The notes under the pieces are model-generated. The model did no database searches. It saw nothing but the letters and a program-made list of their open reading frames with translations, and was not told the DNA's origin. A DNA stretch of 64,000 nt, taken from the IMG/VR virus record IMGVR_UViG_3300027759_006101, positions 124,001 through 188,000 of that record. The stretch is one strand, 5' to 3'. The position numbers were made by a program, and so were the translations under genes. Of this stretch, positions 9,939 through 58,435 are shown one piece after another; position 1 is the stretch's first letter; the number at the start of each line of letters is the position of its first letter.

Positions 9939-9953
9939 TATAATCTTTGTAAT

Positions 9954-10026: not shown

Positions 10027-10048
10027 TTTTAATTTTTCGAGGCTTAAA

Positions 10049-10654: not shown

Positions 10655-10679
10655 AATTTCGAGGTATAATATTTTATAA

Positions 10680-10750: not shown

Positions 10751-10757
10751 TTTACCA

Positions 10758-10828: not shown

Positions 10829-11206
10829 CCTTCTCCTTTTCTGTGATATAATAAAGATATGAACGAAACAATTTTAATTTCAATTTTATTTGCTTTAGTG
10901 GCAATAATTTTCGTCTTGATATTTGTCGTAATTTTTCAGATTAAAAAAATCTTGAAGTCTTACAATAATAATTTTGAAACATTGAATAAGAAGACAGCGA
11001 AAATAGTGGAGTAGATATGAATTTTATAACTGTAACTTGGATTAACTGTTCTGTTATTTTTGTATCTGTTATGGCATTTTCTCTTTATTTTAATTTTCGA
11101 TTAAATAGATTGATAAAGATGCTTGACTCTATGATTACAGATCGACCAGAATGATTTTTAATCCCATCGAATTCGATGGGATTATTTTTTTAAGGTAAAA
11201 TAAATT

Positions 11207-11527
11207 ATGACTGAACGTGAGTGGGTTGAGAAGATAAAAAAAGAATGTGTCTTGAATGTTGGTAATTTTGACACTAGATATGCGATTCAATTAGTTGGGA
11301 GAAGTGGAAGTAAGTTAGGTATTGTTTCTTTGAATAAGCAGTTTATGAGTGTTGACATAATTGACAAACAAAAGTATGAGCGTTTTTATGATCAATTTTA
11401 CTCTAGAAGAAATAAAGAATCTCGTCCACCATTAGTTATAGATTATCATGTTGAACATAATATAACTAAGAATGGATTTAAGGTACTTTGGGACTTTTAT
11501 TATAAGAAAGTAAAGCTTAAATATTAA
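11207..11527 (+). CDS. hypothetical protein
   Basis: 106-aa ORF ending at a bidirectional terminator (AAAAGGGGAGC..GCTCCCCTTTT, ~11531-11555). Confidence 0.65.
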   Translation: MTEREWVEKIKKECVLNVGNFDTRYAIQLVGRSGSKLGIVSLNKQFMSVDIIDKQKYERFYDQFYSRRNKESRPPLVIDYHVEHNITKNGFKVLWDFYYKKVKLKY

Positions 11528-11554
11528 ATAAAAAGGGGAGCTCTGCTCCCCTTT

Positions 11555-12502
11555 TTATTGATTTCGATAATAGTCTAGAAGAAGTTGAACACTATCTTCT
11601 ATATTGTATTTAGGTTTCCAGTTTGTTTTTTCGTAAAACTTATCTACGCTTGGAATTTGTAATGTAACATCTACAGGTCTAAGTAAGTTAGGATCTTCTT
11701 TAGATATAATCTTGCAGTTAGCTTGTTTCTTCAATTCTTCTAAGAAATCACCAACTCTGACTGGAACTGTAGAGCCAATGTTGTAAGCTTCTCCAATTTC
11801 ACATTTTTCTGCAGCTACCCAATAAGCATCAACAACATCTCTTACATCTAAAAGAGTGCGAACAGAATCAAGATTACCGTGAAATAAAATATCCTGTTTC
11901 CCTCTTTCAATATCTACAATTTGTTTTGCAAAAGCACTTGAAAAAATGTCAGGTCTTCGTGGGTTAATATATCCAAAAGCACGAGTAATGACACAAGGAA
12001 TATCATAAGATCTTAAATATGATTTAACTAATTTCTCTTGTGTTAATTTACTAATTGCATAAACATTGACGGGGTCGATTGATTGAGTTTCTTTGATTGG
12101 AATCTCGTCTTCTTTAACTTGTCCGTATACTTCAGAAGTTCCGCAAAATTGAATCATTGGTTTCTGATTTAATATTCTCAATGCTTCTAGTAAATTTAAA
12201 GTTCCATTTACATTATTATTGAAAATTGAGCTAGGACTACTAAAAGAAAGTTTTACGTTAGCATTAGAAGCTAAGTGAAATATATAATCTGGCTGTGCAA
12301 CTTCAAGAGTTCTAATGACGCTTCCAAGATCATTCAGATCACATTCAAACATTTGTACTTTAGAAAAAACTCCTGACTTATTTTTTCTATCAGTATGCCA
12401 TCTTGAAATGCCTTGAATTTGTATGTTTAAAATGGTTGAAAGGTGCTCAGCTAAATAAGTTGCGCCACTACCATTAATTCCTGTAATAAGTGCTTTTTTC
12501 AT
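11555..12502 (-). CDS. gmd: GDP-mannose 4,6-dehydratase-like NDP-sugar dehydratase
   Basis: KALITGING.G.YLAE, TSEVYG, YAISK and LRPVDV; start placed at MKKAL. Confidence 0.8.
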   Translation of the reverse strand: MKKALITGINGSGATYLAEHLSTILNIQIQGISRWHTDRKNKSGVFSKVQMFECDLNDLGSVIRTLEVAQPDYIFHLASNANVKLSFSSPSSIFNNNVNGTLNLLEALRILNQKPMIQFCGTSEVYGQVKEDEIPIKETQSIDPVNVYAISKLTQEKLVKSYLRSYDIPCVITRAFGYINPRRPDIFSSAFAKQIVDIERGKQDILFHGNLDSVRTLLDVRDVVDAYWVAAEKCEIGEAYNIGSTVPVRVGDFLEELKKQANCKIISKEDPNLLRPVDVTLQIPSVDKFYEKTNWKPKYNIEDSVQLLLDYYRNQ

Positions 12503-12515
12503 AATGTTATTATAC

Positions 12516-12986
12516 TCAATCATCACATTCATTGTAATATCCGTTATCGTTAGGGCATATTACATTATCTTCTTCATTTGCTGCAAAATGACAATAAGAT
12601 AAATCTGAGTGAGCAATTAATAATTTCATCATTACTTCATACAAAATTGGGTCTGTGCAATATGGCGTATATATTTGCATTACTTTATCGTAATTGACAA
12701 GAATAAATTTCTTATCGTTTAAGCTGATAGTGAAAAATTTATTAAGTTCAGTTTCAACAAAAAATGCTTGTAATCCAGGAACATTTTTCTTTAGTGAAGC
12801 CCAATTTATTCCGATATTATTTTGTGCTGGAAAAATACTCTTGCCCCAATCTTTGAGACGTAAAATAAGTTCAACATCGTATGAAGATTGTCTTGGTAGA
12901 TTATAGATATCAATTATTTTCATTTCTATTTGCATTATACCTAATCTATGGTACGCTGTCCGTATGAAGCATACAATTACTATCAT
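12516..12986 (-). CDS. hypothetical protein (true start probably more internal)
   Basis: ORF upstream of gmd. Confidence 0.55.
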   Translation of the reverse strand: MIVIVCFIRTAYHRLGIMQIEMKIIDIYNLPRQSSYDVELILRLKDWGKSIFPAQNNIGINWASLKKNVPGLQAFFVETELNKFFTISLNDKKFILVNYDKVMQIYTPYCTDPILYEVMMKLLIAHSDLSYCHFAANEEDNVICPNDNGYYNECDD

Positions 12987-13146
12987 TGATGAGAACTTTG
13001 AAGAGAAAAGTCTTGAATTGACTTATGCTCAATTACAAGAACTTAATCGTTGGTTAAATATTTATTTAAACACAGGCAGAACGCTTGAATATAAGTTAGA
13101 CAAAAGGACTAAAAAAGTTATTGATGTAAAGCTTGCACAGATGTAA
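12964..13146 (+). CDS. hypothetical protein
   Basis: 60-aa ORF upstream of tRNA-Arg. Confidence 0.5.
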   Translation: MKHTITIIDENFEEKSLELTYAQLQELNRWLNIYLNTGRTLEYKLDKRTKKVIDVKLAQM

Positions 13147-13178
13147 GTTGTGGTATAATTAGAGAGTAAGAGAAATAC

Positions 13179-13250
13179 GGCTCCATAGTTAAATGGATAT
13201 AACACGGACCTTCTAAGTCCATATTTTAAGTTCGATTCTTAATGGAGCTA
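13179..13250 (+). tRNA. tRNA-Arg(TCT)
   Basis: GGCTCCA/TGGAGCT acceptor, GGAC-CTTCTAA-GTCC, TTAAGTTCGATTCTTAA. Confidence 0.88.
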
Positions 13251-13267
13251 CTATTTATACCCCCTAA

Positions 13268-15861: not shown

Positions 15862-16947
15862 ATGTGGTATAAATTAGCACAACAATTACAACTTCCTGGG
15901 TTAGATATAGAACAATCCCAGCCAAAAATTAAAGAAAAACCAGAACCAAAAGATAAATCTCCAGAACTTTTAGAAACACAAAAAGAACCTCAAAGTTTAT
16001 TCTTTAGTGATTGGGCTAAAGGTCATTATGTGCCAGAGCAACCTGTCTATCACGGAACAACACACGAATTTGATAGATTCGATATTGACAAAGGTTCAAT
16101 GAGTAATTATTTTGGTCCAGCATTTTATTTTACTAGTGATGAAGAAGATGCTTCAAAAAATTACACTGGTACTGGGCCTGATCAAGAAAGAAACATTGAA
16201 AATCTTCAATATGATTTGCTTGATCAATATGGTGAAGACGAATATTATCTATGGAATTTATATAGCGATGATCCAAGATACAGTAAAGATTTCAATGAAG
16301 ATGGCAAACCATATAACCCAAATTATCTAGCAGAAAAAATTGCCAAAGATACAATTTTAGGACCAAATAAGCCTAGAGTAATTCCTGCTCACGTTAGAAT
16401 GAAAAACCCAATTCATCTGACTAGTTCACAAGATGCAGAACATCCTGAAAAAGTTTTCATTGATGATGTAGAAGGTAGTATGGATTTTTTAGGTAAAAGA
16501 ATCAATCCTTCTGACAACCATAATTTTAGTACAGTTATATCAAAACTTCATAATATTATAGTGGACTATTTGGATTTTGATATTGCTAATGAAATTTGTG
16601 AAGAATTAGTTCAAGAAAATTCTGTTGGGTTTGATGAAGAAATTTCAGCATCTTCAATAATTATGGACTTGATTAAAAAATTAGAGTTTTGGGACCGGGA
16701 TCAAGATACACATTTTAAAGGTGATATTGTCAAAAGATTTGTAAATTCATTAGGATACGATAGCATTGTTATGGATCCTAATGAATTTTTCAGAATGTAC
16801 TCTCAAAAAAGACCAATCAAGCATTTCATCACTTGGAATCCTGAAAACATTAAACACGCCAGAGAAAATATAGAGTTTGACCCAGGGAATCCAGTTATCA
16901 CTGCAATGAGTGGTAAAATTAATTTATGGAAGAATTCTTTGCTGTAG
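15862..16947 (+). CDS. ADP-ribosyltransferase-like protein (ART-PolyVal-like)
   Basis: VYHGT..FDRFD..FGPAFYFT..A..Y, MKNP, GYDSIV and C-terminal PENIK..FDPGNP. Confidence 0.65.
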   Translation: MWYKLAQQLQLPGLDIEQSQPKIKEKPEPKDKSPELLETQKEPQSLFFSDWAKGHYVPEQPVYHGTTHEFDRFDIDKGSMSNYFGPAFYFTSDEEDASKNYTGTGPDQERNIENLQYDLLDQYGEDEYYLWNLYSDDPRYSKDFNEDGKPYNPNYLAEKIAKDTILGPNKPRVIPAHVRMKNPIHLTSSQDAEHPEKVFIDDVEGSMDFLGKRINPSDNHNFSTVISKLHNIIVDYLDFDIANEICEELVQENSVGFDEEISASSIIMDLIKKLEFWDRDQDTHFKGDIVKRFVNSLGYDSIVMDPNEFFRMYSQKRPIKHFITWNPENIKHARENIEFDPGNPVITAMSGKINLWKNSLL

Positions 16948-30832: not shown

Positions 30833-31043
30833 ACTTATCATATCTCTTGACGAAAGTCAAGAGATATTTATTTAATTTATTTTTTGTTGTTTATCTTTAG
30901 GCACGGTAAATACCGTGCCTATAAAATTTTGTCAAATTTATTTTTACTACCACAGTCCAGACCCGTTGTCAAGAAAATAATTGTTTTTAGTTAATAACTA
31001 AATAAGTATTGCAATGTGATATAACTTGCTGTAATATATAGAC

Positions 31044-34014: not shown

Positions 34015-34108
34015 TAAATAAATCCCAAGAAAAATTCTTGGGATTTATCTTTAGTTATGGTATAACCATAACTGAAAAAATTTGCAAGAAAAAAATCTTG
34101 CAATCTTT

Positions 34109-37450: not shown

Positions 37451-37802
37451 ATCAAACTCCTTACACCAATAGTATAACACAAATTATATAAGATGCAAAT
37501 TTAAAAAATATATTTGACAAAAATTTATAGGCACGGTAAATACCGTGCCTTAAGTAAAATGTCAAAAAAATAGGAGGCCTAAGCCTCCTTGTCTTCATCT
37601 TTGAACTTATCATCCAAACAACTCTGGCATCCAACCCACCATTTATCATTGTAGCTCCAGCACTTACCTTGACCTGGCTGAACCACTACTTTGCACCAAC
37701 AGCACTTCTTAGCATACAAGTTCTTCATAACAACCTCCACAGTAAATATACCAGATTGTATATATAATGTCAAGAAAAATACCCCATCTCTGGGGTATTT
37801 AT

Positions 37803-38816: not shown

Positions 38817-39125
38817 TTATTCAGATTCCTCTAGCAACTTTCTCTCTTTTGCTTTGTGTCTGAAGAATGTAGACCTTGATACATTTAATTTTTTCATTGC
38901 TTCACCAGAGGTAGAACCATTATAGATGCATTCTTTGATATCAGATTTTTCAGCTCTATTAGGTGATTTTTTTGCAAGGGGAATTTTTTTTGCGATGTTA
39001 AATTCTCTTTCAATTAAGAATTTAACTGTTTCCTCAGATGTTAAATCTTTGTTTAATTGAAAAGATAACTTTCGTCTTACAACATCAAGTTCTTCTACAT
39101 TTACTTGCACTTCAATACTACTCAT
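38817..39125 (-). CDS. HTH protein (resolvase-type C-terminal HTH)
   Basis: GEAMKKLNVSRSTFFRH. Confidence 0.7.
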   Translation of the reverse strand: MSSIEVQVNVEELDVVRRKLSFQLNKDLTSEETVKFLIEREFNIAKKIPLAKKSPNRAEKSDIKECIYNGSTSGEAMKKLNVSRSTFFRHKAKERKLLEESE

Positions 39126-39266
39126 TTTCGGAACCTTTCTTGTGCTTCTGCTTTCTGGAGTACTTTGACTTGTCCTTGAAAGTACTTGGACGCATCTGAC
39201 TTGCTCGCATCATTTCTGTGCCTGATGCGATAGCCAGTTCTTCAATAAACTTCTTGAATTTTTTCA

Positions 39267-40073: not shown

Positions 40074-40328
40074 TTAGTTTACTTCCAGCAGTTCATTGCC
40101 AACAGGAATGATATGCTTTACACCATTACGGTCTAATTCAGCCTTGTATAGAGTGTCATAAAGAGGAGTATTTTCCTTACGAGCATTACGATACGCAACT
40201 TGATAAGCGGCTTGTTTGCAAGTGCCATTCCAAATGATGCTTGAAGAATTCTTGCTCTTCTCAAGAACATAGTAAGTGCTTGTGCCATCTACTGTAAGAT
40301 GGCGGGTGATTTCGATATGCTTGTTCAT
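40074..40328 (-). CDS. hypothetical protein
   Basis: Leaderless cassette ORF. Confidence 0.65.
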   Translation of the reverse strand: MNKHIEITRHLTVDGTSTYYVLEKSKNSSSIIWNGTCKQAAYQVAYRNARKENTPLYDTLYKAELDRNGVKHIIPVGNELLEVN

Positions 40329-40451
40329 AGCAATATATTACCTCAGTTATAAAGACAATGCAAGAAAATAAATTTATTTGCGAAATAACTTTAGTTATGG
40401 TATTACCATAACTAGAATAAACCCTCAAGAAAATTCTTAGAGGATTTATTT

Positions 40452-40720
40452 GGATTTGTGGCTAGCTGGATTTCAACCAGTACGTAACACAAGGGCAGTT
40501 CTTTCGATGGTCTCTGCCTACGATGATGCCCGTGTCCTAAAAGGAGCATAGCACCCAACCACAAATCATTACACTTGGATAGATTGTTTGCGTCAACCAT
40601 CTCCAAGGTTTCAGTAAAAGATTGTGGACTTAACCACTCCAAGGTTGCTACCCTTATTTGAATCTCGCAATAGATTCTAGCCGTTCTGGTCTTTTACTGT
40701 AATGCGGATACTGACCCACA
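40452..40720 (-). ncRNA. candidate structured non-coding RNA with a tRNA-like 3' domain
   Basis: Own promoter (TTGTGC-N17-TATTAT) and terminator; nested helices whose G-U pairs work only on the minus strand; T-arm-like CTGG-TTGAAAT-CCAG. Confidence 0.6.
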
Positions 40721-40823
40721 CCAATATAATACACTATCTATGGGTAAAGCACAAGAACTATTTAAACTATTTTTAGATGAGAATTTTCTTGCAATCATAT
40801 AATACAGATGATATATTACAGGT

Positions 40824-41189
40824 ATGGAAAACACTACTGCAAAACGAATGGTAATGAGAGTTCGACTTGAGGATGTTAGCGATAGGTCATCCTGTATTGC
40901 ATATGTAGGTCAAGGTACTTGGTTTGATGGCAAGCACTTTATCGTAACACAATACAAAGCAAACCCATCAGTCTATTATTTCTTTGTTTACAATGACCAG
41001 ATTCCTTATAATTACTTTGGAGATTTCAAAGGCTCCTATGGTAAAGAAATCTGGACTGCAAATCCTGACAATGGTGAAATGGCTGGAACCACTTATATTT
41101 ACAGCCCAAGTTTAGACCGCTTGTATAAGCCTTTTAGCCCAAATCCAAATTGGGATAATTCACCAGCATTCATTTTTGAAATGAAGTAG
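40824..41189 (+). CDS. cassette protein (MENTT start)
   Basis: Leaderless promoter, family A terminator. Confidence 0.7.
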   Translation: MENTTAKRMVMRVRLEDVSDRSSCIAYVGQGTWFDGKHFIVTQYKANPSVYYFFVYNDQIPYNYFGDFKGSYGKEIWTANPDNGEMAGTTYIYSPSLDRLYKPFSPNPNWDNSPAFIFEMK

Positions 41190-44094: not shown

Positions 44095-44251
44095 ATTATA
44101 TCTGTTATATGATGAAATTTCAAGAGAAAAAAATATTGCAAAGATTTTACAGGTATGGTGGTCACCATACCTTCGATAAAGTTGCAAAAATAATTTGACA
44201 GCTTGACTTGACAAAAAAAAAGCCCCCTCCCGAAGGAGGGGGCTTGGTGGT

Positions 44252-45676
44252 CTATTCGACCACCTCGCCGAGGCTCTCAGTGAACTTGCTCAGTACCAGT
44301 TTGGCAATTTTCAACTCTTCAGGTCGAAAGGTTGCAAGAACGTGCTTCCTTGCCTTGAGGACATCACTGCGGTATCCCTTTGTAAGGCTACGCCATTTGT
44401 CCACATAGGTGTACGATGCATTCTTATTGCGATACTGGTCGTATTCCTTGGGCATCTGGTAACACCATAGTGCGATGTCGGCAACTGAATCATTGGTCAA
44501 GTCTATCTCTGTCTTGATTTGGTTTACATTGAAATCCTTGTCAAGGTTAGAGGAAACCTCAATGGTGATTCGCACTCTTGAAGCACGACCATGGCTGTCG
44601 GCAAACACTACCCAAGAACGGCTCTCTCTCGAAATAGTGGTCTTTCGCTTGCCAATTGTACCGTTGGCATAACCATCAATGTACGCTTCGATTGCCTTGT
44701 TACCAATTGCAGGGTGCATAGGACGGCACTTGCTGTCTAGGTGCAATCGACCATCACGGTAGAAATACACACCAGAGTTTTGGTTATTCACAGGGCGATT
44801 GTACACATCCTTGGGCAATAGTTTGCACTCGGAACGCTCTGGCAAAAGGAACACAGACACCTTCACATCCTCATTGCCAACGTGGAACACCTTGGATTGA
44901 ACAGGAGTTTGTCGTAGCATTGGGTCTAAAGGCTTGACTACCTGAAGAGTTGCATAAGTCAGACCGACCTTAAGAGATGCACCCTTTTCGATACGCTTTT
45001 GGTATACCTCACCAAGTTGCGCCCCGATGCTAGTAAGGTTCTTTAAACCATTCGGGTTAAAGTTCAGTCCATTCTTAAGGAATGAGGAGGCTTCGTCTTT
45101 CAGGTTATGAACCACAACGATAGTACCGTGGTTCATAAAGTTGCCATTCTCATCTGTGACCTCTTTCCAAATTGAAAGGGCTGGGTCATCAGGATTGATG
45201 CGAGAGTGGCACTTGCGTACGGACACGTTCCAATCGTCCATTGCTTTCATATTGCTCTGGTTGTATTCCATTGCGTGAATGCACTCATCTTCGCATTTCA
45301 TGATGACGGTAGAATGACCAGTGGTTGAGAACTTGGATACAAAGTTCTTCCATCCCGAACCATTCTTGCCAAGGTTAGGTGATACAATGGTGCTTACCTT
45401 TTTGGTAGTCCAGCCTTCGCTTGCCATCATATGCATAATGGATGGTGTCAAAGCCTTCTTGCCATTGTCTGCAACAACGAGAACCTTCTTGCCATTATAG
45501 GTTGAAAGATATACACTGATTTGTGTAGCACCGCTATCGAATGAGTTGTCGATAGGCTCTAGAAGAGCGGAATTAAGTGTGTGACCAGAGTTCTGGTTAC
45601 GGGTGAATGAAACGGTTGGTTCCACTGAACGAATCTCGTTCAAGGGTGTAAGGTCTTCAAACATTGTCTTCTCCAA
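44252..45676 (-). CDS. GHKL (MORC/HATPase_c_3-like) ATPase domain protein
   Basis: ALLEPIDNSFDSGA, VADNG, LGKNGSGWK, HGTIVVV; GVYFYRDGRL. Confidence 0.75.
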   Translation of the reverse strand: MEKTMFEDLTPLNEIRSVEPTVSFTRNQNSGHTLNSALLEPIDNSFDSGATQISVYLSTYNGKKVLVVADNGKKALTPSIMHMMASEGWTTKKVSTIVSPNLGKNGSGWKNFVSKFSTTGHSTVIMKCEDECIHAMEYNQSNMKAMDDWNVSVRKCHSRINPDDPALSIWKEVTDENGNFMNHGTIVVVHNLKDEASSFLKNGLNFNPNGLKNLTSIGAQLGEVYQKRIEKGASLKVGLTYATLQVVKPLDPMLRQTPVQSKVFHVGNEDVKVSVFLLPERSECKLLPKDVYNRPVNNQNSGVYFYRDGRLHLDSKCRPMHPAIGNKAIEAYIDGYANGTIGKRKTTISRESRSWVVFADSHGRASRVRITIEVSSNLDKDFNVNQIKTEIDLTNDSVADIALWCYQMPKEYDQYRNKNASYTYVDKWRSLTKGYRSDVLKARKHVLATFRPEELKIAKLVLSKFTESLGEVVE

Positions 45677-48657: not shown

Positions 48658-48744
48658 AGGAAGAGACAGGATTCGAACCCGCACACCCCGTCAAGGGTGA
48701 GACCGCTTTCAAGGCGGTTGCAATACCATTCTGCTCACTCTTCC
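48658..48744 (-). tRNA. tRNA-Ser(TGA)
   Basis: GGAAGAG/CTCTTCC, ACCGC-CTTGAAA-GCGGT, long variable arm, GGGTTCGAATCC. Confidence 0.9.
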
Positions 48745-48754
48745 AATAGGTAAA

Positions 48755-48946
48755 TTATACCTCGTCTGCCATAAACTTGCTAATATCTTCACGGATTTCA
48801 ACAAGAACATCGTCAGATATATCTAACTTTTCAGCAAGCATATCAAATAATTCTGCATCAGCCAAGAGTAGTTTAAATCCCTCAAGAATGACCAGCAAAT
48901 CGTGTTCTGATTTGTCTGATAAATAGTTTAATGTATCGTTTGGCAT
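48755..48946 (-). CDS. small acidic protein
   Basis: 63-aa ORF with promoter. Confidence 0.55.
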   Translation of the reverse strand: MPNDTLNYLSDKSEHDLLVILEGFKLLLADAELFDMLAEKLDISDDVLVEIREDISKFMADEV

Positions 48947-49062
48947 AATATTTCTCTACAAACAATATATCATAAAGTTATAGCAGTGTCAAAAAAAATC
49001 CCCTCATATATTTCAATGAGGGGAGGAGTAGGACATGCAAAACACCAACCAACCAGAAACAA

Positions 49063-49135
49063 TGGGCGATGAGGGACTCGAACCCCCACTCAAGGGATTA
49101 TGAGTCCCCTGCTTTAACCATTAAGCTAATCGCCC
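49063..49135 (-). tRNA. tRNA(CAT), probably Ile2 (lysidine type)
   Basis: GGGCGAT/ATCGCCC; AGCAGGGGACTCATAATCCCTTG closely resembles enterobacterial Ile2 (AGCAGGCGACTCATAATCGCTTG). Confidence 0.85.
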
Positions 49136-49140
49136 CAAAA

Positions 49141-49203
49141 GGTGGAATGGGACTTACACCCATATCAAAGGTTTATTCCTCTGCTTTATTTAAGCTATCC
49201 ACC
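49141..49203 (-). pseudogene. degenerate tRNA-like cloverleaf
   Basis: GGTGGA/TCCACC, GCTT-AAATA-AAGC, AGAGG-AATAAA-CCTTT, ATGGG-TGTAAGT-CCCAT; non-canonical loops. Confidence 0.55.
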
Positions 49204-49452
49204 ATCAATAATTTCAAACCATTCGCCCTCAAAGAATCTTGATTTACATTTTTCGGTTTCTATTTCATAATGGTACTGAAAACCTGGATGCCATATAGAA
49301 GTATAACTGAAATAACCTTCGGAGCATTTATAAGTTCTAATGACATTCACTCCTTCTAAAAATTCATCTTTAATAACCTTATATTTACCCTTATATAGAT
49401 AAAGGGTTTGTGGTTTTACTGGAAAATCTACTTTTAGAAGAATGTCGTTCAT
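49195..49452 (-). CDS. hypothetical protein
   Basis: Likely start MNDILL. Confidence 0.5.
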   Translation of the reverse strand: MNDILLKVDFPVKPQTLYLYKGKYKVIKDEFLEGVNVIRTYKCSEGYFSYTSIWHPGFQYHYEIETEKCKSRFFEGEWFEIIDGG

Positions 49453-49590
49453 AATATTACCCAAGATGTGAGAAGAATGTAACGGGCATACGAACCATGT
49501 TATTTCCACTCTTCTCACATTTTTCCAGAATCACCACATTCTGAGTTTGTTCTTGATGCTGTAATCACCTTGAACAAATATAGCATATCA

Positions 49591-49827
49591 TTAATCTATG
49601 TAGTCCACAACAAGTTTTTTGGAAACTTCTTTGGTTCCATTATATGTTCTAATGAAATCAATATCACCCTCATCATTAATTTCAAGAACTAGAAATTTTG
49701 GCTCATACTTTTTTTCTTTAGTATGTTGTTCGATAAAGGCATTGAGATAACTGTAATTTTCAAAAGTCAATTTGATGATAATGTCAAAATCATCTGTGAC
49801 TTCATATAATACGTGTTTCATATACAA
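49591..49827 (-). CDS. hypothetical protein
   Basis: 78-aa ORF. Confidence 0.55.
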   Translation of the reverse strand: MYMKHVLYEVTDDFDIIIKLTFENYSYLNAFIEQHTKEKKYEPKFLVLEINDEGDIDFIRTYNGTKEVSKKLVVDYID

Positions 49828-49851
49828 GTGTACATTAAGAAAACACTATTG

Positions 49852-50448
49852 TCAAGGTTTATAATCTTTGGAGATTACTTTATTAAATTGCCTAGGGTCA
49901 TACCAATAGCATCCAACACAAGTGCCTGCATAATTAGACTCTCCAACAATCCATCCAAATGAATAACCAAGCCTTTTTGCATCGTATCTTTCATTTGTTT
50001 CCTCACACGTCTTACAATGAGTTCTCTTTGATAAATTTACGTTCCTCAATAATGGCTGAAAATCATCTTCATTTTGATTTTCTACGCTATTATAAGTATC
50101 AGAACTATATCGTCCGTCTTTATGGTCACACTCGATATTTTCTCCACCAACATCAACAACACGGCATCTTTGTTTTCTTATTGATTTGAAAATATCAGTT
50201 CGTATACGTTTTTCAATTGATGTTTCTCTATAACCATCAAGACGAATTCCTATAGTGCGATTTTTATCTTTTTCTCTATGAACAATGAAATCTTTTAATT
50301 GTCCATCAGAGCGGTTCCAATCTCCACCATTTTTAGTTTGGAATTCTACGCCGGGATATAAAGTTTCCAATTCACTATATAGCCAAAGACGAGTTTTACC
50401 ATCACTATCTGGTTGTGACGCTTGAAGAAACATTTGTACTTTTGTCAT
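49852..50448 (-). CDS. NlaIII/IceA1-like HNH restriction endonuclease
   Basis: FL...PD.DG.TR, NGG.W.R, IE.DHKDGR, DFQPL, KR..CK.C..T..R.DA and CVGCY.YDP match the IceA1/NlaIII pattern. Confidence 0.75.
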   Translation of the reverse strand: MTKVQMFLQASQPDSDGKTRLWLYSELETLYPGVEFQTKNGGDWNRSDGQLKDFIVHREKDKNRTIGIRLDGYRETSIEKRIRTDIFKSIRKQRCRVVDVGGENIECDHKDGRYSSDTYNSVENQNEDDFQPLLRNVNLSKRTHCKTCEETNERYDAKRLGYSFGWIVGESNYAGTCVGCYWYDPRQFNKVISKDYKP

Positions 50449-51139
50449 TTAATTTAGCGATTCTCTCTGTTGCTTTTGTGTAATAAGTTTCATCCAATTC
50501 ACAACCCATAAAGTTTCGTCCAGTGTTATAGCAAGCCACTGCACAAGAAGCAGAGCCAGCAAAACAATCCAAAACAGTATCGCCTTCATTGGAGTGTTTG
50601 GTAATTAAAGCTTGCAGTAAATTGAGAGGCTTTTGAGTAGGATGGAAACGGTCTCTCTCATGACAGATTGCAAACTCATAAATTCCCTTATCATATTGAG
50701 AATGAAATGTTGGTTTACTTCCTTTGATAGCAGTAAGGGCTATCTCTCTTGAATTGGTGAGATAATTAATCTTCGAATTGATAGGAACAGGATTTGTCTT
50801 TACCCATTCAATAAACCGGAGTTGCTTAAACTTGGCACTCTCAATCCAATTCTTAAGAGTCTCGATTTTCCACAAGTCATAGAAACAAATTAATGTTCCA
50901 CCTGGCTTGAGGATACGATAAGATTCTTCCATAACCTTATCAAGAACAAAGATTTCATTATCCCACTCTCCAAATTCATAGGACATCTTAAATCTTTCAA
51001 CACCCTTCTCTCCACAACTCTCGAATCCTGTTGCTCGTGAAATTGTATATGGTGGGTCAATCAAAACAAGATTTACTGATTTATCTGCAACACGAGGCAA
51101 AAAATCAAGACAAGATTCATTATTTAAAACGATAGACAT
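50405..51139 (-). CDS. N4/N6 DNA methyltransferase (beta class), likely cognate of the adjacent nuclease
   Basis: IDPPY, HPTQKP, VLDCFAGSAS; overlaps the nuclease start. Confidence 0.9.
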   Translation of the reverse strand: MSIVLNNESCLDFLPRVADKSVNLVLIDPPYTISRATGFESCGEKGVERFKMSYEFGEWDNEIFVLDKVMEESYRILKPGGTLICFYDLWKIETLKNWIESAKFKQLRFIEWVKTNPVPINSKINYLTNSREIALTAIKGSKPTFHSQYDKGIYEFAICHERDRFHPTQKPLNLLQALITKHSNEGDTVLDCFAGSASCAVACYNTGRNFMGCELDETYYTKATERIAKLNDKSTNVSSSVTTR

Positions 51140-51319
51140 TTGGCTTCCTCTTATTCATAATACGATATATCTTTAGGGTATGCAAGTTTAAAAAATTATT
51201 TGATCAATATTTTTAGGAATGGTATTTACCATTCCTTAAGAATAATTGCAAAAAAATCCCTCTTCCTATGAGCGAAGAAGAGGGATAGAACACAGAATTA
51301 TGAGCGGATTCTGTGTACT

Positions 51320-51814
51320 CTATTCTATCACAAGAAATTCAGTTGACAAGTCTTCTTTTTGGACAGGCTTTTCAGTGACAAAATAACTTTCTCGATTTAC
51401 CCAATGGCATCCAGAGATTACAACAAAGCAATCATCAGAATCAACCATTGTCCAAATGTTTTCTGGATTCTGCTTCTTTACAAATTCCCATTGGTCATCT
51501 TCAGAGTAATCGAAAGAACATCCCTCGAAACTAGTTTCCTCGAATTGATTCTTTAATGGTTTGTATTTCTCAACCCATTCATCATAGGTAAATACTCTCC
51601 TAAGAGAAAGAATATTCATCTCTGTCACTTCACAAATACCAACCTCATAATTGCCAATAAATGAATTAATATATTCTTCAGCAATCAATTTATCTTCGGT
51701 ATTGGTTGTTTGGATATACCCTTGCTTTTCAACATTTATAATTGGCTTACCGGGATATTTCCAACTAAACTTAACATTGACTTCGTAGGTTGGGGTAATA
51801 ATAGTGTTTTCCAT
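51320..51814 (-). CDS. phage protein (MENT start)
   Basis: IWTMVD...SG.HWVNR.YFVTEKP is typical of phage hypotheticals. Confidence 0.7.
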   Translation of the reverse strand: MENTIITPTYEVNVKFSWKYPGKPIINVEKQGYIQTTNTEDKLIAEEYINSFIGNYEVGICEVTEMNILSLRRVFTYDEWVEKYKPLKNQFEETSFEGCSFDYSEDDQWEFVKKQNPENIWTMVDSDDCFVVISGCHWVNRESYFVTEKPVQKEDLSTEFLVIE

Positions 51815-51914
51815 ACCTGTATTATATCATATGTTGTATGTACTGCAATAGGAAATCCCCTTCTTGTCGGAGAAGGGGATTGGTTTCACTTGTGGAGATA
51901 AGACAAGTGAAAAG

Positions 51915-51986
51915 TGGCTCCAGCAGAAGTCGAATCTGCACTCAAAATCTTAAAAGGATTCTGCTTTACCGTTAAGCTATGGAACC
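51915..51986 (-). tRNA. tRNA-Lys(TTT)
   Basis: GGTTCCA/TGGAGCC, GAATC-CTTTTAA-GATTT, GCAGATTCGACTTCTGC. Confidence 0.85.
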
Positions 51987-52116
51987 AAACTAAAAGAAAG
52001 AGGTTATGTGTTGCCTGTGATGGAGACTAGTTATCCAGAGCACAATTCCCACTTCACATTAAAAATTTCTTTCACGACAAGACTCAGATTACTCTTTTGT
52101 CTAACCTCTCTCAAAA

Positions 52117-52197
52117 TCCTCCAGACGAGATTCGAACTCGTAAGGCTTGCGCCAACGGATTTTAAGTCCGTCGTGTATACCGTTCCACCACCGGAGG
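52117..52197 (-). tRNA. tRNA-Leu(TAA)
   Basis: CCTCCGG/CTGGAGG, ACGGA-CTTAAAA-TCCGT, variable arm GGCGCAAGCC, GAGTTCGAATCTC. Confidence 0.9.
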
Positions 52198-52317
52198 ATA
52201 CGCTAATATTATACCATTAGGGTTAGCCGATTCAAGAACTATCTATACATTTATTTTTCTTTGACAAAAAAATAAAGGGATGGTATTCACCATCCCTTTT
52301 AAAATATACTAAATATT

Positions 52318-54599: not shown

Positions 54600-56708
54600 T
54601 TAGTCCAATAAGCCCTCACTTTTCAGATAATCTTGCGACTTAAGGTACTCATTGACAATATACCAGTACTTTTCGGTCGGAGATTCACTATAATGTGATG
54701 ATTTTTGTGAATATCCGAACAAATTACGCAAAATTGGGTATTTAATTAGGGTTTTATCTACTAATTCTATGCATTCATTGTAAATGTCAAGATACAAACC
54801 ATAACCTTGCTTCTTAAGGAATGAAACTCTTTCACCTTGGTTTGAAATGGACAAACCAGAACTGTAATACTCTGATATGATTTCCTTTAGACGGGTTAAG
54901 TCTCTGTCAGTGTCTACCATATTTTTTCTGAAGGCATATTGCCATTCATCAGACACATCAAGCGATATCAGATACTGATTGAATTTCATAATTTCTTCAT
55001 CGGTTTGATTGTAAAGCGACTGCTGGATGTAATCAGTTATCTCAATCCATCCAGAACCCAATTTTTCAATGTCGCAATACTTGACACCGTAAATGTTGTC
55101 ACATCTGATTCCTAATGTATGAGCATTGGACAGCAATTCTTTGAATGCTTCCATTGTCTTAATATTTGTACCATTAGGGTGTTTGGCTACAGGGAGGAAT
55201 CGCTTAATCTCAACATAGATTCCTTCGGATTGTTGGAGAGAAAGCGTGGTCGATTTCCAAGTGTTTCGCAAGGTGCTTTGATGGGGACAATAACTGTAGA
55301 CTTCGCTTGTGGCAAACGACCCAGCAGATTTGCCTGTGACCTTGCTGTATTGCAATGTTGATACATCGACAAAATTTGCACCCTGCCATTCTGGGTGGTT
55401 AACAATTGAATCGCAATCAGCCTTTGACGCAAAACGCAAAAGGAATCCCGACAACTTTGAATAACCAGAATTCATAATTCTCTGGCGAATCGAATTTTGA
55501 GGGACATTGCCATAGTAGGCAAATAAGGTTTGTCCCTCTACTATGTTCAGAGATGATGAATTTTTGAATGACGAACGTGCATCATTTCGGATTTCTTCTA
55601 TCTCCTTAATGGCAGGGTAATCTTTCCTGTAAAGAAGCATATTGGAATTTGTTCTATATGCTTTGCCACCATAGATTGAAATGAGATTAAAAACATCTCT
55701 TATCTGATTAGTGTTTTCAAATTCAAGAGCAAATTGATAGAAACTCTTGCATTCAGATAGTCTCTCATCAATTTGACCCTTGACTGTGGAATGAATTCCT
55801 TTCAGTGCCTCAAAGATATATTGTTTGGTCTTTGTATTCATTTCCAAAGATTCACGGGAGGCAGATGGAACAACACTACCTATCGGGGCATAGAGCTTAA
55901 CCTTTAGATTGCGGAAGCACTCTACAGTCTTGAATTCATCACTCGTCAAACCCAAATCATCAATGTGAAATGGATAGTTAACATTCCCCATTCTGACACA
56001 AGACTTTTGATTGAATCCCCAAGTGTGAATAGCATAGTCTTCAGTACTGACAACGAAAGATTTTTCGACCTGACGTTGCAACAAATTTACAACCCGGTCA
56101 TCATTCTTAACTATTGGCTGTGGGTTGAATTCTGCAAGGAACGAACCTGCTACCTCACGGAATTGGGACAGGTCGATTGTCTTAACAACGATATCAATTG
56201 CCAATCCAGTTTCAGATGTTGCTTCCTCAGATATCTTGGAAATCTTACCGATGTTGGTTTCATCAATATATGCGAGGTAAACTGACTTTACACCATTGTG
56301 ATATGACGTGATGGTGAAATCGTTTACATAACAGAATGCAGACTTGCTACCAAGACCCAACATTCCAACCTGCTCATTTGTTCCACGTTTGGTTGATTCG
56401 CCATACGAAACAAAGATATTGTAAACTTCAGACTCTGACAGACCCTTGCCAAAATCACGGATAGTCAAAGAATTCTTGAATGCTGTTGGGAATGATACCT
56501 CAATCGGTCGGCTTGGAATACCTGCATCAATGTGTGCGTCAAATGCATTTGTGCAGTATTCACGAATGATGGCAAGAGGCTTGTTGCTATACAACTGGTT
56601 GCGGAGAATGCCAAAGATATGACCAATGTTAGACTGCTTGACAGTAAAGAATGCTTCGGACTGGATGCCAGATGACTGGACTTGAATTGTCGATTCAGCG
56701 ATTTTCAT
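54600..56708 (-). CDS. rIIA: rIIA-like protein (N-terminal GHKL domain)
   Basis: LYSN..A.IREY.TNA.DAH, IRDFGKGLS, STKR..N..VG.LGLGSKSAF, PSASRESL. Confidence 0.88.
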   Translation of the reverse strand: MKIAESTIQVQSSGIQSEAFFTVKQSNIGHIFGILRNQLYSNKPLAIIREYCTNAFDAHIDAGIPSRPIEVSFPTAFKNSLTIRDFGKGLSESEVYNIFVSYGESTKRGTNEQVGMLGLGSKSAFCYVNDFTITSYHNGVKSVYLAYIDETNIGKISKISEEATSETGLAIDIVVKTIDLSQFREVAGSFLAEFNPQPIVKNDDRVVNLLQRQVEKSFVVSTEDYAIHTWGFNQKSCVRMGNVNYPFHIDDLGLTSDEFKTVECFRNLKVKLYAPIGSVVPSASRESLEMNTKTKQYIFEALKGIHSTVKGQIDERLSECKSFYQFALEFENTNQIRDVFNLISIYGGKAYRTNSNMLLYRKDYPAIKEIEEIRNDARSSFKNSSSLNIVEGQTLFAYYGNVPQNSIRQRIMNSGYSKLSGFLLRFASKADCDSIVNHPEWQGANFVDVSTLQYSKVTGKSAGSFATSEVYSYCPHQSTLRNTWKSTTLSLQQSEGIYVEIKRFLPVAKHPNGTNIKTMEAFKELLSNAHTLGIRCDNIYGVKYCDIEKLGSGWIEITDYIQQSLYNQTDEEIMKFNQYLISLDVSDEWQYAFRKNMVDTDRDLTRLKEIISEYYSSGLSISNQGERVSFLKKQGYGLYLDIYNECIELVDKTLIKYPILRNLFGYSQKSSHYSESPTEKYWYIVNEYLKSQDYLKSEGLLD

Positions 56709-56921
56709 AATAGGTTTCCTCACTAGAATATTACCATCTGTGTATATGGTGTGCAAGTACTATATTTGAAATAAAAAAAATTGACAAATTTTTTTAGGTC
56801 TGGTGTCTACCAGACCTGTCATAGAATGTCAAATTATTTTTTTAGCTGCATTTAAGCACAAATAAGGACGCTATAAGAGCATTTAGTGCAATTATAACGT
56901 CCTTATTGGAAGATTTGTGGG

Positions 56922-58238
56922 CTAAACGCCCACAAACTGGTATTGTCGTGAGACCTTTTCTTCCATTTGGTTTGCTCTAGCGTCAATTAGACCCCATCGC
57001 TTGGAAATCTCTTCCAATGAAGAATCAATGGATGGTGCAAGTATCTTGCTTGCTAAGGTTTCCATCTCTTCACGGGTTGCCCCGGTGTAATCTTGGGCAG
57101 AGCGGGTCAAGCCATTGATGATACCAAAGGCAGACTTTTCGTGAACATCGCCGTGGCGTTCGTGCAAGGAATCCAAGTAGCCCTTGTGCCAGAGTTTACC
57201 CTGTTCGATGGTCATCTTTTCATCCCTAGCCAACTGAGCAATTACAGCAACAGGGTTCTTAACCTTGACTTGCTTTGCATATCCTAACAAGGTCAACATA
57301 TCATTGCCTTGTGTCAATGCAACCTTGATTGCTTGGGTAACTTGCAATTGAAGGTCTCCAAGGTCAATCTTACCCATATGGCGTTGGTTGACGTTGATTT
57401 CTGAATTCATACGTCCCCATATCATACCATTGAGGCAGATTGCTCTAAACAGGAAAGGCGAAATCTTGAATGTTGAATTACGAATCTCACTGTTCTTGAA
57501 TGCAATGCCCACGCCATAGTCAGAGTCTGGTTCACTCTTCATATAGTCTGGCAAGAGGATGTTCCCATAGATATCATCACCATCATTGAAGAGGTGTGAA
57601 GCAAGAGCATCATTCAAAGATGGCAGAGCATTGGCTACCATTTCCATTGCTTCGTGATTGTCAATCACGCCGTATCGTTCTGATACAATAGCCCGGATAA
57701 CATCGTTACCATCATCATCGTGACGGATGCGGACATTAAAGGAACGCTTTTCCTTACCCTTGTTATTCCAGTCAGTTTCACGGCGGTCTAAGTCTGCATT
57801 GACAAACTTGACCAAGTCATCGTTGTATTCCCTTTCCTTGAGAAAGTTAACCATTGACGATGGAATGTCTGTGAACATACGTAAGGAATTGATACCTGAA
57901 TCGGTAAGAGGTGTACCGTCAATCAAGGTTTCAACATCCTTGAGGCGAATTTCTGATTCTGGCTTGATTACATCTACCTTGTTGGTCGATTGTGACTTAA
58001 TTGTTTCGATGAAATCGGCAAGCGGTGTACATTTAGCCTGCCATTGCTTGGCAACGTGGCGGTGTGATGCAGAGGACTGAAGCCCAATGGCATTCACCCA
58101 ATTACCACTAGCATCTTGCTTGGCTACAGCACCTTCACGGGGTTGAAGGGACTGGGCATTGGTGAAAACAGAGGTGTTTGGTGTGACCTTGACTGGTGCA
58201 TCGTCCAGTTCAAGGAACGATTTAGGTGTATTCGACAT
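56922..58238 (-). CDS. DUF932/DUF945-like protein
   Basis: IRAIVSERY..IDN, NSE, FR.ICLNGMI, H.G, INGLT. Confidence 0.7.
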   Translation of the reverse strand: MSNTPKSFLELDDAPVKVTPNTSVFTNAQSLQPREGAVAKQDASGNWVNAIGLQSSASHRHVAKQWQAKCTPLADFIETIKSQSTNKVDVIKPESEIRLKDVETLIDGTPLTDSGINSLRMFTDIPSSMVNFLKEREYNDDLVKFVNADLDRRETDWNNKGKEKRSFNVRIRHDDDGNDVIRAIVSERYGVIDNHEAMEMVANALPSLNDALASHLFNDGDDIYGNILLPDYMKSEPDSDYGVGIAFKNSEIRNSTFKISPFLFRAICLNGMIWGRMNSEINVNQRHMGKIDLGDLQLQVTQAIKVALTQGNDMLTLLGYAKQVKVKNPVAVIAQLARDEKMTIEQGKLWHKGYLDSLHERHGDVHEKSAFGIINGLTRSAQDYTGATREEMETLASKILAPSIDSSLEEISKRWGLIDARANQMEEKVSRQYQFVGV

Positions 58239-58435
58239 AACGGGTTGGCTTCCTTATCAAACAATGTGATACTGAATATTACCATCTGTGTATACTAGTT
58301 GCCACAAGTATTTTAAATATATTTTTGAATGCCAGGACTATCACAAAAGCTTGTTTTTGTCAAGAAAATAAAAAACTTGACAACTTTCTTAAGCCGGGGA
58401 AATCCCCGGCTTAAGAAAGTTCTTATATTTTAAAT

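What the first reader, a model, noticed from the sequence alone, without database searches (positions are those of the whole stretch)
40452..40720. A cassette carrying a ~270-nt structured RNA with a tRNA-like 3' domain
Seen: a GC-richer stretch with its own minus-strand promoter and terminator, next to element 40393. On the minus strand, the 3' domain is closed by GATTTGTGGTTGG/CTAGCCACAAATC (13 bp with two G-U pairs that are mismatches on the plus strand). It encloses a D-like loop, a long GACAC-GGGCA/TGCCC-TTGTGTT arm and a T-arm-like CTGG-TTGAAAT-CCAG. The 5' domain is a multibranch closed by CAGTAAAAGA/TCTTTTACTG with three hairpins, plus CATTACA/TGTAATG. Known: tmRNA and bacterial Y RNAs contain tRNA-mimic domains. 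Inference: an undescribed early phage ncRNA, possibly a decoy for anticodon nucleases or other host RNA-binding defences.
Basis: partly seen in the sequence, partly recalled or inferred. Interest (0 to 1): 0.72.

Follow-up and report, generated by a model that had tools for sequence, protein, structure and literature searches.

The report
New structured RNA of lake jumbo phages
This stretch is a real, separately transcribed and abundant ~270-nt non-coding RNA gene of an uncultured freshwater jumbo phage. It founds a previously undescribed RNA family with a portable 5' pseudoknotted domain and a cloverleaf-shaped 3' domain; its job is still unknown, most plausibly a tRNA-shaped decoy.

Summary
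Window 40452-40722 (minus strand) is an independent gene for a highly structured RNA. It has no Rfam match. More than 120 homologues exist in freshwater phage contigs, 96 of them unique full-length sequences. The fold is backed by strong covariation: 22 of 80 pairs carry compensatory changes, and 0 of 500 shuffles reach that. Most copies have a conserved promoter and terminator. The overlapping 76-aa ORF is not conserved. In four lake metatranscriptomes, contigs cover only this RNA and the flanking 5 kb is silent.

The 5' multibranch, the 12-13-bp closing stem and the T-arm-like hairpin are confirmed. The long GACAC-GGGCA/TGCCC-TTGTGTT arm and the CATTACA/TGTAATG helix are refuted.

The RNA is modular. 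The 5' domain is a four-way junction plus a hairpin joined by a covarying kissing loop. It also occurs alone as the leader of an 88-aa ORF in an unrelated 84-kb phage. In another phage it sits in front of a different 3' domain that scores 28.5 bits on the Rfam tRNA model (threshold 29). The window's own 3' domain is tRNA-like only in topology and in its T-loop motif.

The function was not shown. My best guess (about 0.3) is a stable early RNA that titrates a host factor recognising tRNA shape.

The parts
40726..40754 (-). Promoter-like site: TTGTGC, 17 nt, TATTAT. It aligns with TTGCAT/TTGACA-N16-18-TAATAT of the homologues. The inferred start is near 40720.
   Evidence: Alignments. A promoter-like site is found in 71 of 85 unique upstream regions, 26 or 36-38 nt before P1. 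It falls below the threshold of the simple scan.
40700..40723 (-). 5'-terminal hairpin, variable in sequence and length among homologues (short and long forms). It is absent in the L007/L115 type.
   Evidence: Fold. In L003 and the long forms an entirely different sequence forms a hairpin in the same place.
40612..40699 (-). 5' domain core, a four-way junction. P1 is 40699-40691 with 40620-40612. The invariant junction ACCAGAACGGCUA is 40690-40678. P2 is 40677-40660 (loop AUUGCG). P3 is 40656-40640 (invariant 7-nt loop GUAGCAA). P4 is 40637-40624.
   Evidence: P1 has AU48/GC42 and GC76/AU18. All variable pairs of P2 change on both sides. P4 has GC76/AU17.
40574..40607 (-). P5 hairpin, with loop ACGCAAA at 40593-40587.
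   Evidence: AU50/CG41, UA55/CG40, GC41/GU41/UA14.
40588..40670 (-). Span of the proposed 5-bp kissing loop, which pairs UUGCG of the P2 loop (40670-40666) with CGCAA of the P5 loop (40592-40588).
   Evidence: 100% standard pairs in 96 sequences. L007 has UUGUG with CACAA (change on both sides). L018 has U-G and L115 has G-U. Whether the pairing is within one molecule or between molecules is not known.
40453..40567 (-). 3' domain, a four-way junction. P6, the closing stem, is 40567-40555 with 40465-40453. P7 is 40553-40527. P8 is 40522-40483 (CGU/ACG, then GGCAG/CUGCC, with the invariant 15-nt loop AGACCAUCGAAAGAA at 40513-40499). P9, the T-arm-like hairpin, is 40480-40466 (loop UUGAAAU).
   Evidence: 21 sequences, 35 pairs, 96.5% paired, 13 pairs changed on both sides, 0 of 500 shuffles as high. 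One search found the P8 base pair G-C79/U-A12/A-U3/C-G1.
40416..40443 (-). Terminator-like hairpin (CCUCUAAG...CUUGAGGG) followed by UUUAUU.
   Evidence: Conserved. A terminator-like site is found in 72 of 82 unique downstream regions. RNA contigs stop before it, so the mature 3' end may lie near 40452.
40392..40414 (-). Neighbouring hairpin ('element 40393'). With the next promoter (40368-40335) it forms a stem-loop-plus-early-promoter unit in front of the 84-aa ORF (40328-40074). It is context, not part of the RNA.
   Evidence: 9 such promoter-like sites in the window against 1.8 expected; short repeats scattered over genome positions 154-176 kb.

Best explanation
Shown:
- Window 40452-40722 (minus strand) is an independent gene for an abundant, stable, non-coding RNA of about 270 nt.
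- It belongs to a new family carried by uncultured freshwater jumbo phages.
- The RNA is built from autonomous modules: a variable 5' hairpin; a conserved 5' domain (a four-way junction plus a hairpin tied to it by a kissing loop); in some relatives an optional ~100-nt extra cloverleaf; and a 3' four-way-junction domain.
- In that 3' domain a T-loop-type hairpin stacks directly on a 12-bp closing stem.

Inferred:
- The host RNA polymerase makes the RNA from a sigma-70-type promoter early in infection, and the RNA accumulates.
- The 5' domain is a portable module that gives stability, or binding to a host factor, to whatever follows it. That can be a tRNA-shaped domain of type A (this window), one of type B (L234), or an mRNA (L007/L115).
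- The 3' domain presents a tRNA-like elbow and acceptor/T-type helix that cannot be charged (no free CCA end) or decoded (no anticodon loop).
- In that form it competes stoichiometrically for a host protein that recognises tRNA shape: a defence nuclease or transferase, or a tRNA-processing or translation factor.
For: Real RNA gene:
- Covariation: 14 sequences, 80 pairs, 97.8% paired against 92.4% in shuffles, 22 pairs changed on both sides, 0/500. The 3' domain alone: 13 of 35 pairs. The 96 unique sequences agree.
- Many G-U pairs are legal only on the minus strand.
- Promoter and terminator are conserved.
- The ORF frame stays open in only 26 of 93 homologues, and 17 have a stop at codon 3.
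- Contigs of four lake RNA libraries cover 40466-40709 only, while 5.5 kb around it is empty.

Modularity:
- L007 and L115 have the 5' domain alone in front of a ribosome-binding site and an 88-aa ORF. Compensatory changes keep P1, P2, P5 and the kissing loop.
- That phage (84 kb, 45% GC, complete) shares only about 9 proteins with this one.
- L234 has the same 5' domain followed by a different 3' domain with a 12-bp stem, GG in a D-like loop and a GGUUCGAGG T-loop. It scores 28.5 bits, E 5.6e-4, on Rfam tRNA.
- An extra cloverleaf is inserted between the domains in at least 11 loci.

T-loop pattern: U-U-N-A-A-N-Y is conserved.

No phage partner: Rsr, RtcB, CCA-adding enzyme, SmpB and RNA ligase are all absent from the 358-kb genome. 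That points to a host partner.
Against: - No partner protein is known.
- The window's own 3' domain gets no tRNA hit at E<=10. Its covariance model does not pick up the nine real tRNAs of the window, nor the L234 domain (7 bits). tRNA mimicry here therefore rests on topology, on the T-loop motif and on analogy with L234.
- The existence of a form with the 5' domain in front of an mRNA fits a cis-acting role at least as well.
- The invariant 15-nt loop and the invariant junctions suggest a specific function that a mere shape decoy does not explain.
- Strand and exact ends were not measured (contigs carry no direction).
- The genome record is 89% complete, so absent proteins are not proven absent.
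Confidence: 0.3

Rival explanations
1. Cis-acting module. The 5' domain acts on its own transcript: as a 5' stabiliser, as a site that modifies the transcribing polymerase (antitermination in the manner of HK022 put RNA), or as a translational operator. The tRNA-shaped domain would be only a processing or 3'-protection signal. The 'RNA gene' would then be the stable remnant of a longer early transcript.
For: The 5' domain always lies right after a promoter. In L007/L115 it is the leader of an ORF. Genes downstream lie on the same strand. The module has been exchanged between unrelated phages.
Against: Most copies have their own terminator (72 of 82), and it is followed by a fresh promoter for the next gene. 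No read-through contigs were seen in four RNA libraries. Two different tRNA-shaped domains at the same place, both on 12-bp stems, suggest that the shape itself is selected.
Confidence: 0.2
2. Self-assembling RNA or scaffold. The complementary P2 and P5 loops pair between molecules, giving dimers, rings or cages, as in phi29 pRNA or the ROOL/GOLLD RNA-only assemblies. tRNA-shaped domains would be displayed on the assembly.
For: A 5-nt loop-loop complementarity is kept through changes on both sides. The RNA is abundant and stable. It is lake-derived and phage-borne like GOLLD (bioRxiv 10.1101/2024.12.08.627333, found).
Against: The two loops sit on adjacent helices of one molecule, so pairing within the molecule is the simpler reading. 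Nothing here separates the two. The RNA is much smaller than ROOL or GOLLD, and no Rfam match to them was found.
Confidence: 0.1
3. Decoy for an anticodon nuclease specifically.
For: The phage carries many tRNA genes, as phages facing tRNA-cutting defences often do (general knowledge). The RNA has tRNA-like topology. P3 in the 5' domain has a 5-bp stem and an invariant 7-nt loop with U at position 2 and A at position 6.
Against: The arm at the anticodon position is not conserved between type A (15-nt loop) and type B (tetraloop). The P3 loop would give the anticodon AGC, which by general knowledge bacteria do not use. P3's invariance was partly imposed by the search pattern.
Confidence: 0.07
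4. A ribozyme (self-cleaving or acting on tRNA-like substrates), or a very reduced relative of RNase P RNA or tmRNA.
For: Junctions and loops are invariant while stems covary, as in catalytic or ligand-binding RNAs. By my recollection, short strings resemble RNase P conserved regions.
Against: No Rfam ribozyme, RNase P or tmRNA hit at E<=10. ARAGORN finds no tmRNA. The order of the similar strings does not match RNase P. RNA contigs span both domains uncut.
Confidence: 0.05
5. Protein-coding: the 76-aa ORF (40642-40412, minus strand) is the functional product.
For: The ORF exists in the window.
Against: It has a TTG start and no evident ribosome-binding site. The frame is open in only 26 of 93 homologues, 17 have a stop at codon 3, and indels that are not multiples of three are common. 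A 110-nt insertion splits it in L002. Substitutions follow base-pairing.
Confidence: 0.01

Closest known systems
tRNA and the T-loop motif (Rfam RF00005)
   Same: Four-way junction. The last hairpin abuts the 3' strand of the closing stem. It has a 7-nt loop of pattern U-U-N-A-A-N-Y. The sister variant L234 scores 28.5 bits on the tRNA model and has GG in a D-like loop.
   Different: The window's domain gets no tRNA hit. Its closing stem is 12 bp, not 7. It has no free 5' or CCA end and no 7-nt anticodon loop. The 'D' and 'anticodon' arms are much larger. It is fused to a 5' domain.
tmRNA and bacterial Y RNA (YrlA)
   Same: Stable non-coding RNAs that join a tRNA-mimicking module to another functional domain.
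   Different: In tmRNA the tRNA-like part is formed by the two ends of the molecule and is charged. YrlA works with Rsr (Ro). No Rfam or ARAGORN match was found, and neither SmpB nor Rsr is encoded in the phage.
tRNA-like modules fused to other RNAs (MALAT1-mascRNA, gammaherpesvirus 68 tRNA-miRNA transcripts) and RNase P-processed phage RNAs (P1/P7 C4 RNA). The phage examples are recalled from memory; the eukaryotic ones came up (PMC8457004, PMC4337559).
   Same: A tRNA-shaped element sits 3' of another RNA module in one transcript.
   Different: Those elements serve as cleavage signals with free acceptor ends. Here the stem is extended to 12 bp, and RNA contigs span both domains.
GOLLD, ROOL and other large phage-associated structured RNAs of unknown function
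   Same: Phage-borne, lake-derived and ornate, with covariation-supported folds and no known function.
   Different: No sequence or structure match. The RNA is two to three times smaller and its architecture differs.
PeSL cassettes (promoter-early stem-loops) of T4-type phages (PMC2839356, PMC4122927)
   Same: The gene sits among small ORFs separated by stem-loop-plus-early-promoter units. Its position differs among relatives, as in PeSL-mediated module shuffling.
   Different: That concept explains how the cassette moves, not what the RNA does. This phage has no Pfam Gp23 match, so it is not shown to be T4-type.

Membership tests
tRNA (RF00005) | Score at or above the Rfam gathering threshold (29 bits), or a call by ARAGORN | tested here: not met
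   The window's 3' domain gets no hit at E<=10. ARAGORN finds nothing at 40.4-40.7 kb. The L234 variant scores 28.5 bits, just under threshold, and ARAGORN finds nothing there either.
tRNA (RF00005) | 7-bp acceptor stem with free ends and a 3' CCA or discriminator; 7-nt anticodon loop | tested here: not met
   The closing stem is 12-13 bp and embedded in a longer transcript. The tail after the stem is variable and has no CCA. The arm at the anticodon position has a 15-nt loop.
T-loop motif | 5-nt U-N-N-R-A turn in a 7-nt hairpin loop closed by a G-C pair, with first U and fifth A conserved | tested here: met
   The loop is UUGAAAU here. Across 96 sequences it is U(0.99) U(1.0) G/A A(1.0) A(1.0) N U/C, and the stem CUGG/CCAG is invariant. 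The three-dimensional fold was not tested.
tmRNA | tRNA-like domain made from the 5' and 3' ends, a tag reading frame, and detection by ARAGORN or Rfam | tested here: not met
   Searches give no match. The closing stem encloses only about 100 nt and the 5' domain lies outside it.
Y RNA / YrlA | Rfam match and a linked Rsr (TROVE) gene | tested here: not met
   No Rfam match. No TROVE or RtcB in the 358-kb record.
RNase P RNA, GOLLD, ROOL, riboswitches, self-cleaving ribozymes (all Rfam 15 families) | Covariance-model match | tested here: not met
   No match at gathering thresholds in the window apart from 9 tRNAs. Nothing relevant at E<=10 in 40200-41000 or 40440-40580.
Independent ncRNA gene (generic) | Own promoter and terminator, a conserved structure with covariation, no conserved ORF, and a discrete transcript | tested here: met
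   The transcript's strand and exact ends were not measured.
PeSL-type mobile regulatory cassette | Stem-loop followed by an early promoter flanking small variable genes, with module position differing between close relatives | tested here: met
   Hairpin at 40414-40392 plus promoter at 40368-40335. The upstream neighbour is F1, F7 or F8 in different relatives. Short intergenic repeats are scattered over genome positions 154-176 kb.

The most novel reading that the evidence does not exclude
The 5' domain is a portable 'delivery' module that docks whatever follows it onto a central host machine such as the ribosome. It would boost translation when an ORF follows (L007/L115). In the jumbo phages it would place a non-chargeable, anticodon-less tRNA mimic into a tRNA site. 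That would be a phage RNA that reprograms or shields host translation, a functional cousin of tmRNA or of IRES tRNA mimicry. Nothing here excludes it, and nothing tests it.
Probability: 0.08. Interest if true: 0.92.

Novelty: new variant of a known kind. Interest (0 to 1): 0.72.

Why it matters
Phage-encoded structured RNAs of this size with strong covariation are rare, and almost none has a known function. It is abundant enough to assemble from metatranscriptomes when its neighbours do not. It is also clearly modular: the same 5' domain precedes two unrelated tRNA-shaped domains or an mRNA, and it has crossed between unrelated phages. That combination gives a concrete handle on how phages use tRNA mimicry outside translation, on portable RNA modules, and on a host factor that they target. 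The family could go to Rfam as it stands.

Tried and rejected
- Rfam at gathering and at E<=10 on the region, on the 3' domain alone and on L234: only the near-threshold tRNA hit in L234.
- BLAST against 50,697 deposited phage genomes, near and distant modes: no match. The nearest cultured relatives are below 30% identity on rIIA.
- The 121-aa neighbour gave no related loci.
- One viral scan was wasted on a pattern with one N too many. Two further degenerate patterns brought only chance matches, apart from L234 and L235.
- Of 87 matches to the 15-mer from the 3' loop, only family members were real. The type-A 3' domain never occurs without the 5' domain.
- The genome-contig scan gave 18 hits, and 17 were chance. 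L227 is a related phage fragment binned into a Crocinitomicaceae MAG, which is only weak evidence for the host.
- Candidate partner proteins in the phage (Rsr, RtcB, CCA-adding enzyme, SmpB, RNA ligase): none found.
- Proteins shared with the 84-kb phage that also has the 5' domain: only dUTPase, a CHAP lysin, an SNase-type nuclease, Tad2-like proteins and a few unknowns. None is an evident RNA partner.
- Antisense targets of the invariant loops in the phage genome: none.
- A covariance model of the type-A 3' domain found neither real tRNAs nor the type-B domain.
- The neighbours' Pfam and PHROG matches are uninformative.
- The 2023 catalogue of 10,006 candidate viral structured RNAs (PMC10690425) could not be checked for this motif, because its supplements are not held.
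- Complex prediction was not used. RNA-only predictions without a defined partner would not have decided anything.

Full report
**What the window is.** The window is positions 124001-188000 of a 358,269-bp virus record with 33.7% G+C. It has no close cultured relative. A 10-kb megablast and a distant blastn search against 50,697 phage records found nothing, and its rIIA-like protein is below 30% identical to any deposited phage. The same DNA occurs in freshwater and lake metagenomes. The window holds nine tRNA genes in two clusters. The finding lies in a run of small minus-strand ORFs of unknown function.

**Checking the observation.** The stretch is modestly G+C-richer than its surroundings, at 43%. 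As RNA, the minus strand of 40440-40730 folds to -86.2 kcal/mol (z -2.97, 0 of 200 shuffles as good). The plus strand does not stand out (z -0.88). Rfam 15 has no family for it, either at gathering thresholds or at E<=10. ARAGORN sees no tRNA or tmRNA there. The genome holds one copy.

**Homologues.** A neighbouring 84-aa protein led to two related contigs, and exact-pattern scans led to many more. Nearly all are from lakes and other fresh water. That gives 96 unique full-length sequences, falling into 65 clusters below 96% identity. Carrier contigs reach 300-358 kb, so the family belongs to a clade of jumbo phages. Of 18 hits in bacterial genomes, 17 are chance. The remaining one is a 4.3-kb fragment of a related phage (80% identical) binned into a Crocinitomicaceae MAG.

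**Structure of the 5' part.**
- RNAalifold on 12 sequences gave 72 pairs, 17 of them with compensatory changes.
- On 14 sequences the refined structure has 80 pairs and 97.8% of cells paired, against 92.4% in shuffles.
- 22 pairs change on both sides, against 13.3 +/- 1.8 in shuffles (0 of 500 reach it). Sliding the partners by 1-3 columns drops pairing to 33-44%.
- The 96-sequence set agrees.
- The parts are: a variable 5' hairpin; P1 (9 bp) closing a four-way junction with P2, P3 and P4; then P5.
- The P2 loop (UUGCG) and the P5 loop (CGCAA) are complementary in every sequence. L007 has UUGUG with CACAA, L018 has a U-G pair and L115 a G-U pair. I read this as a kissing loop.
- The junction ACCAGAACGGCUA and the loops are nearly invariant. 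The invariance of the P3 loop was partly imposed by my search patterns; that of the others was not.

**Structure of the 3' domain.**
- It is a four-way junction. P6 has 12 robust pairs; the outermost 13th pair is standard in only 68% of homologues.
- The arms are P7, P8 and P9.
- P8 has a 3-bp base found by mutual information (G-C 79, U-A 12, A-U 3, C-G 1), an internal loop, a 5-bp stem and an invariant 15-nt loop.
- P9 (CUGG-UUGAAAU-CCAG) directly abuts the 3' strand of P6.
- On 21 diverse sequences, 96.5% of cells pair and 13 of 35 pairs change on both sides (0 of 500 shuffles).
Changes in GGGCA are matched in UGCU, not in UGCCC.
- Frequent G-U pairs, for example U-G in 66-78 sequences at two positions, would be A-C on the other strand. 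So the RNA is the minus strand.

**It is a gene for an RNA, not a protein.**
- A promoter-like TTGACA/TTGCAT-N16-18-TAATAT site lies 26 or 36-38 nt before P1 in 71 of 85 unique upstream regions. The two spacings match the short and long 5' hairpins.
- A terminator-like hairpin with a T run follows in 72 of 82 downstream regions.
- The frame of the 76-aa ORF stays open in only 26 of 93 homologues, and 17 have a stop at codon 3. A 110-nt insertion cuts it in L002.

**Expression.** Six lake metatranscriptomes hold 0.3-0.6 of the sampled words of a 421-nt query. Four of these runs were laid on 5.5 kb of the window, and each gave one contig of 203-240 nt on the RNA itself.
- X10: 40469-40708.
- X11: 40466-40697.
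- X13: 40494-40696.
- X20: 40488-40709.

Nothing else lies on the flanks, except two pieces near 38.9-39.1 kb in X20, 9-10% divergent from the window. The X20 copy differs at seven positions, including the paired changes 40537/40538 with 40542/40543 in P7. The silent flanks argue against DNA contamination. Contigs have no direction and fall about 13 nt short of both predicted ends. That fits a mature RNA of roughly 40452-40722 with the terminator trimmed, but this is inference.

**Modularity.**
- The gene's position differs among relatives. It may follow a 149-156-aa ORF (PHROG 1987), sit back to back with a 121-127-aa ORF, or follow a third ORF.
- The region is full of stem-loop-plus-promoter units and short intergenic repeats. 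These resemble the PeSL cassettes that shuffle modules in T4-type phages (PMC2839356, PMC4122927).
- At least 11 loci carry an extra ~100-nt domain between the two halves. It is itself a stem closing three hairpins.
- L007 and L115 have only the 5' domain, directly after a promoter and directly before a ribosome-binding site and an 88-aa ORF. Compensatory changes keep every helix.
- That virus is a complete 84-kb genome of 45% G+C. It shares only about nine proteins with this phage: dUTPase, a CHAP lysin, an SNase-type nuclease, Tad2-like proteins and a few unknowns.
- L234 (also L185) has the same 5' domain followed by a different 3' domain. That domain has a 12-bp stem, a D-like arm with GG, a 4-bp arm with a tetraloop and a GGUUCGAGG T-loop.
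- The L234 domain scores 28.5 bits (E 5.6e-4) over the whole Rfam tRNA model, whose threshold is 29.

**How tRNA-like is the window's own domain?** By models it is not. It gets no tRNA hit at E<=10. A covariance model built from it finds only itself (137 bits). It misses the window's nine tRNAs and gives L234 only 7 bits. By architecture it is: a four-way junction, a T-loop-type 7-nt loop (U-U-N-A-A-N-Y) on a hairpin flush with the closing stem, and a 12-bp stem of the same length as in the near-tRNA variant. So 'tRNA-like' is a supported analogy, not membership.

**Function.**
- No phage-encoded partner was found. Rsr, RtcB, CCA-adding enzyme, SmpB and RNA ligase are all absent, in a record that is 89% complete.
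- The invariant loops have no antisense targets in the genome.
- High abundance points to a stoichiometric role.
- The constant 5' module with interchangeable 3' cargo points to a portable module that gives stability or host-factor binding.
- Two unrelated tRNA-shaped cargos on equal stems point to selection for tRNA shape without charging or decoding.
- I therefore favour a stable early decoy or sponge for a host factor that reads tRNA shape (about 0.3).
- The rivals are a cis-acting leader (0.2), a self-assembling RNA (0.1), the specific anticodon-nuclease decoy (0.07), a ribozyme or reduced RNase P/tmRNA relative (0.05), and coding (0.01).
- None of these mechanisms was tested here.

**Novelty.** Nothing in Rfam 15 matches. 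Literature searches found no description. A 2023 catalogue of 10,006 unnamed candidate viral RNAs may contain it, but its supplements could not be read. It is a new RNA family. In kind, it is a new variant of the tRNA-mimicking, phage-borne structured RNAs.

Noticed in passing
window 40392-40414, 40335-40368, and similar sites at 30944-30977, 34059-34092, 37745-37778, 44095-44128, 58335-58368: Repeated stem-loop and TTTTCTTG(A/C)-type promoter units lie between the small minus-strand ORFs (9 sites against 1.8 expected). Short 70-140-nt intergenic repeats are scattered over genome positions 154-176 kb. They look like PeSL-type shuffling cassettes.
   Followed up: partly
L002:3084-3193, L016, L108, L127, L170 and others: An optional ~100-nt domain is inserted exactly between the 5' and 3' domains. 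It is a stem closing three hairpins, and one loop contains UUGCAACC, reminiscent of the P3 loop.
   Followed up: partly
L013:13100-13130, L099, L133, L205: A 27-30-nt extra hairpin (CUAG-UGAAAA-CUAG) is inserted in the 3' internal loop of P8, just before the T-arm-like hairpin. That is where a tRNA would carry a long variable arm.
   Followed up: no
L008 and L020, between the closing stem and the terminator: An insertion of about 70 nt with its own G+C-rich hairpin lies between P6 and the terminator. The 3' tail is therefore another variable site.
   Followed up: no
L184:4732-5036 (-) and L184:2-128 (+): One metagenome contig carries a full copy of the RNA and, at its very end, a second partial copy in the opposite orientation. 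This may be a real duplication or an assembly artefact.
   Followed up: no
window about 51-266 and 1251-1394 (genome 124051-124266, 125251-125394), and just before the window (genome 123825-124055): Several small ORFs are similar to Tad2-like (DUF2829, Thoeris anti-defence) proteins of the 84-kb phage G001. They were found by tblastn, and the Pfam hit is on the G001 proteins.
   Followed up: partly
window 54600-56756 (-), 44252-45676 (-), 56922-58238 (-), 15862-16947 (+): An rIIA-like protein (HATPase_c_3), a second HATPase_c_3 protein, a DUF932 protein and a protein with an ART-PolyVal ADP-ribosyltransferase domain.
   Followed up: partly
window 9255-13251 (+) and 48658-52198 (-): Two tRNA clusters: Asn, Glu, Gln, Thr and Arg on the plus strand; Ser, Met, Lys and Leu on the minus strand. 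The RNA gene lies between them, adjacent to neither.
   Followed up: no
window 38916-39145: In one 2025 freshwater metatranscriptome (X20), two contigs 9-10% divergent from the window (21 and 12 differing letters) cover the 102-aa ORF with a weak HTH match (38817-39125, minus strand). It is the only other transcribed piece seen in the 5.5 kb examined.
   Followed up: no
L227 (contig DORI01000184.1): A 4.3-kb fragment, 80% identical to window 39-43.6 kb and containing the RNA, is binned in a Crocinitomicaceae MAG (UBA8924). This could be a host hint or a binning artefact. The sigma-70-type promoters argue against a Bacteroidota host.
   Followed up: partly
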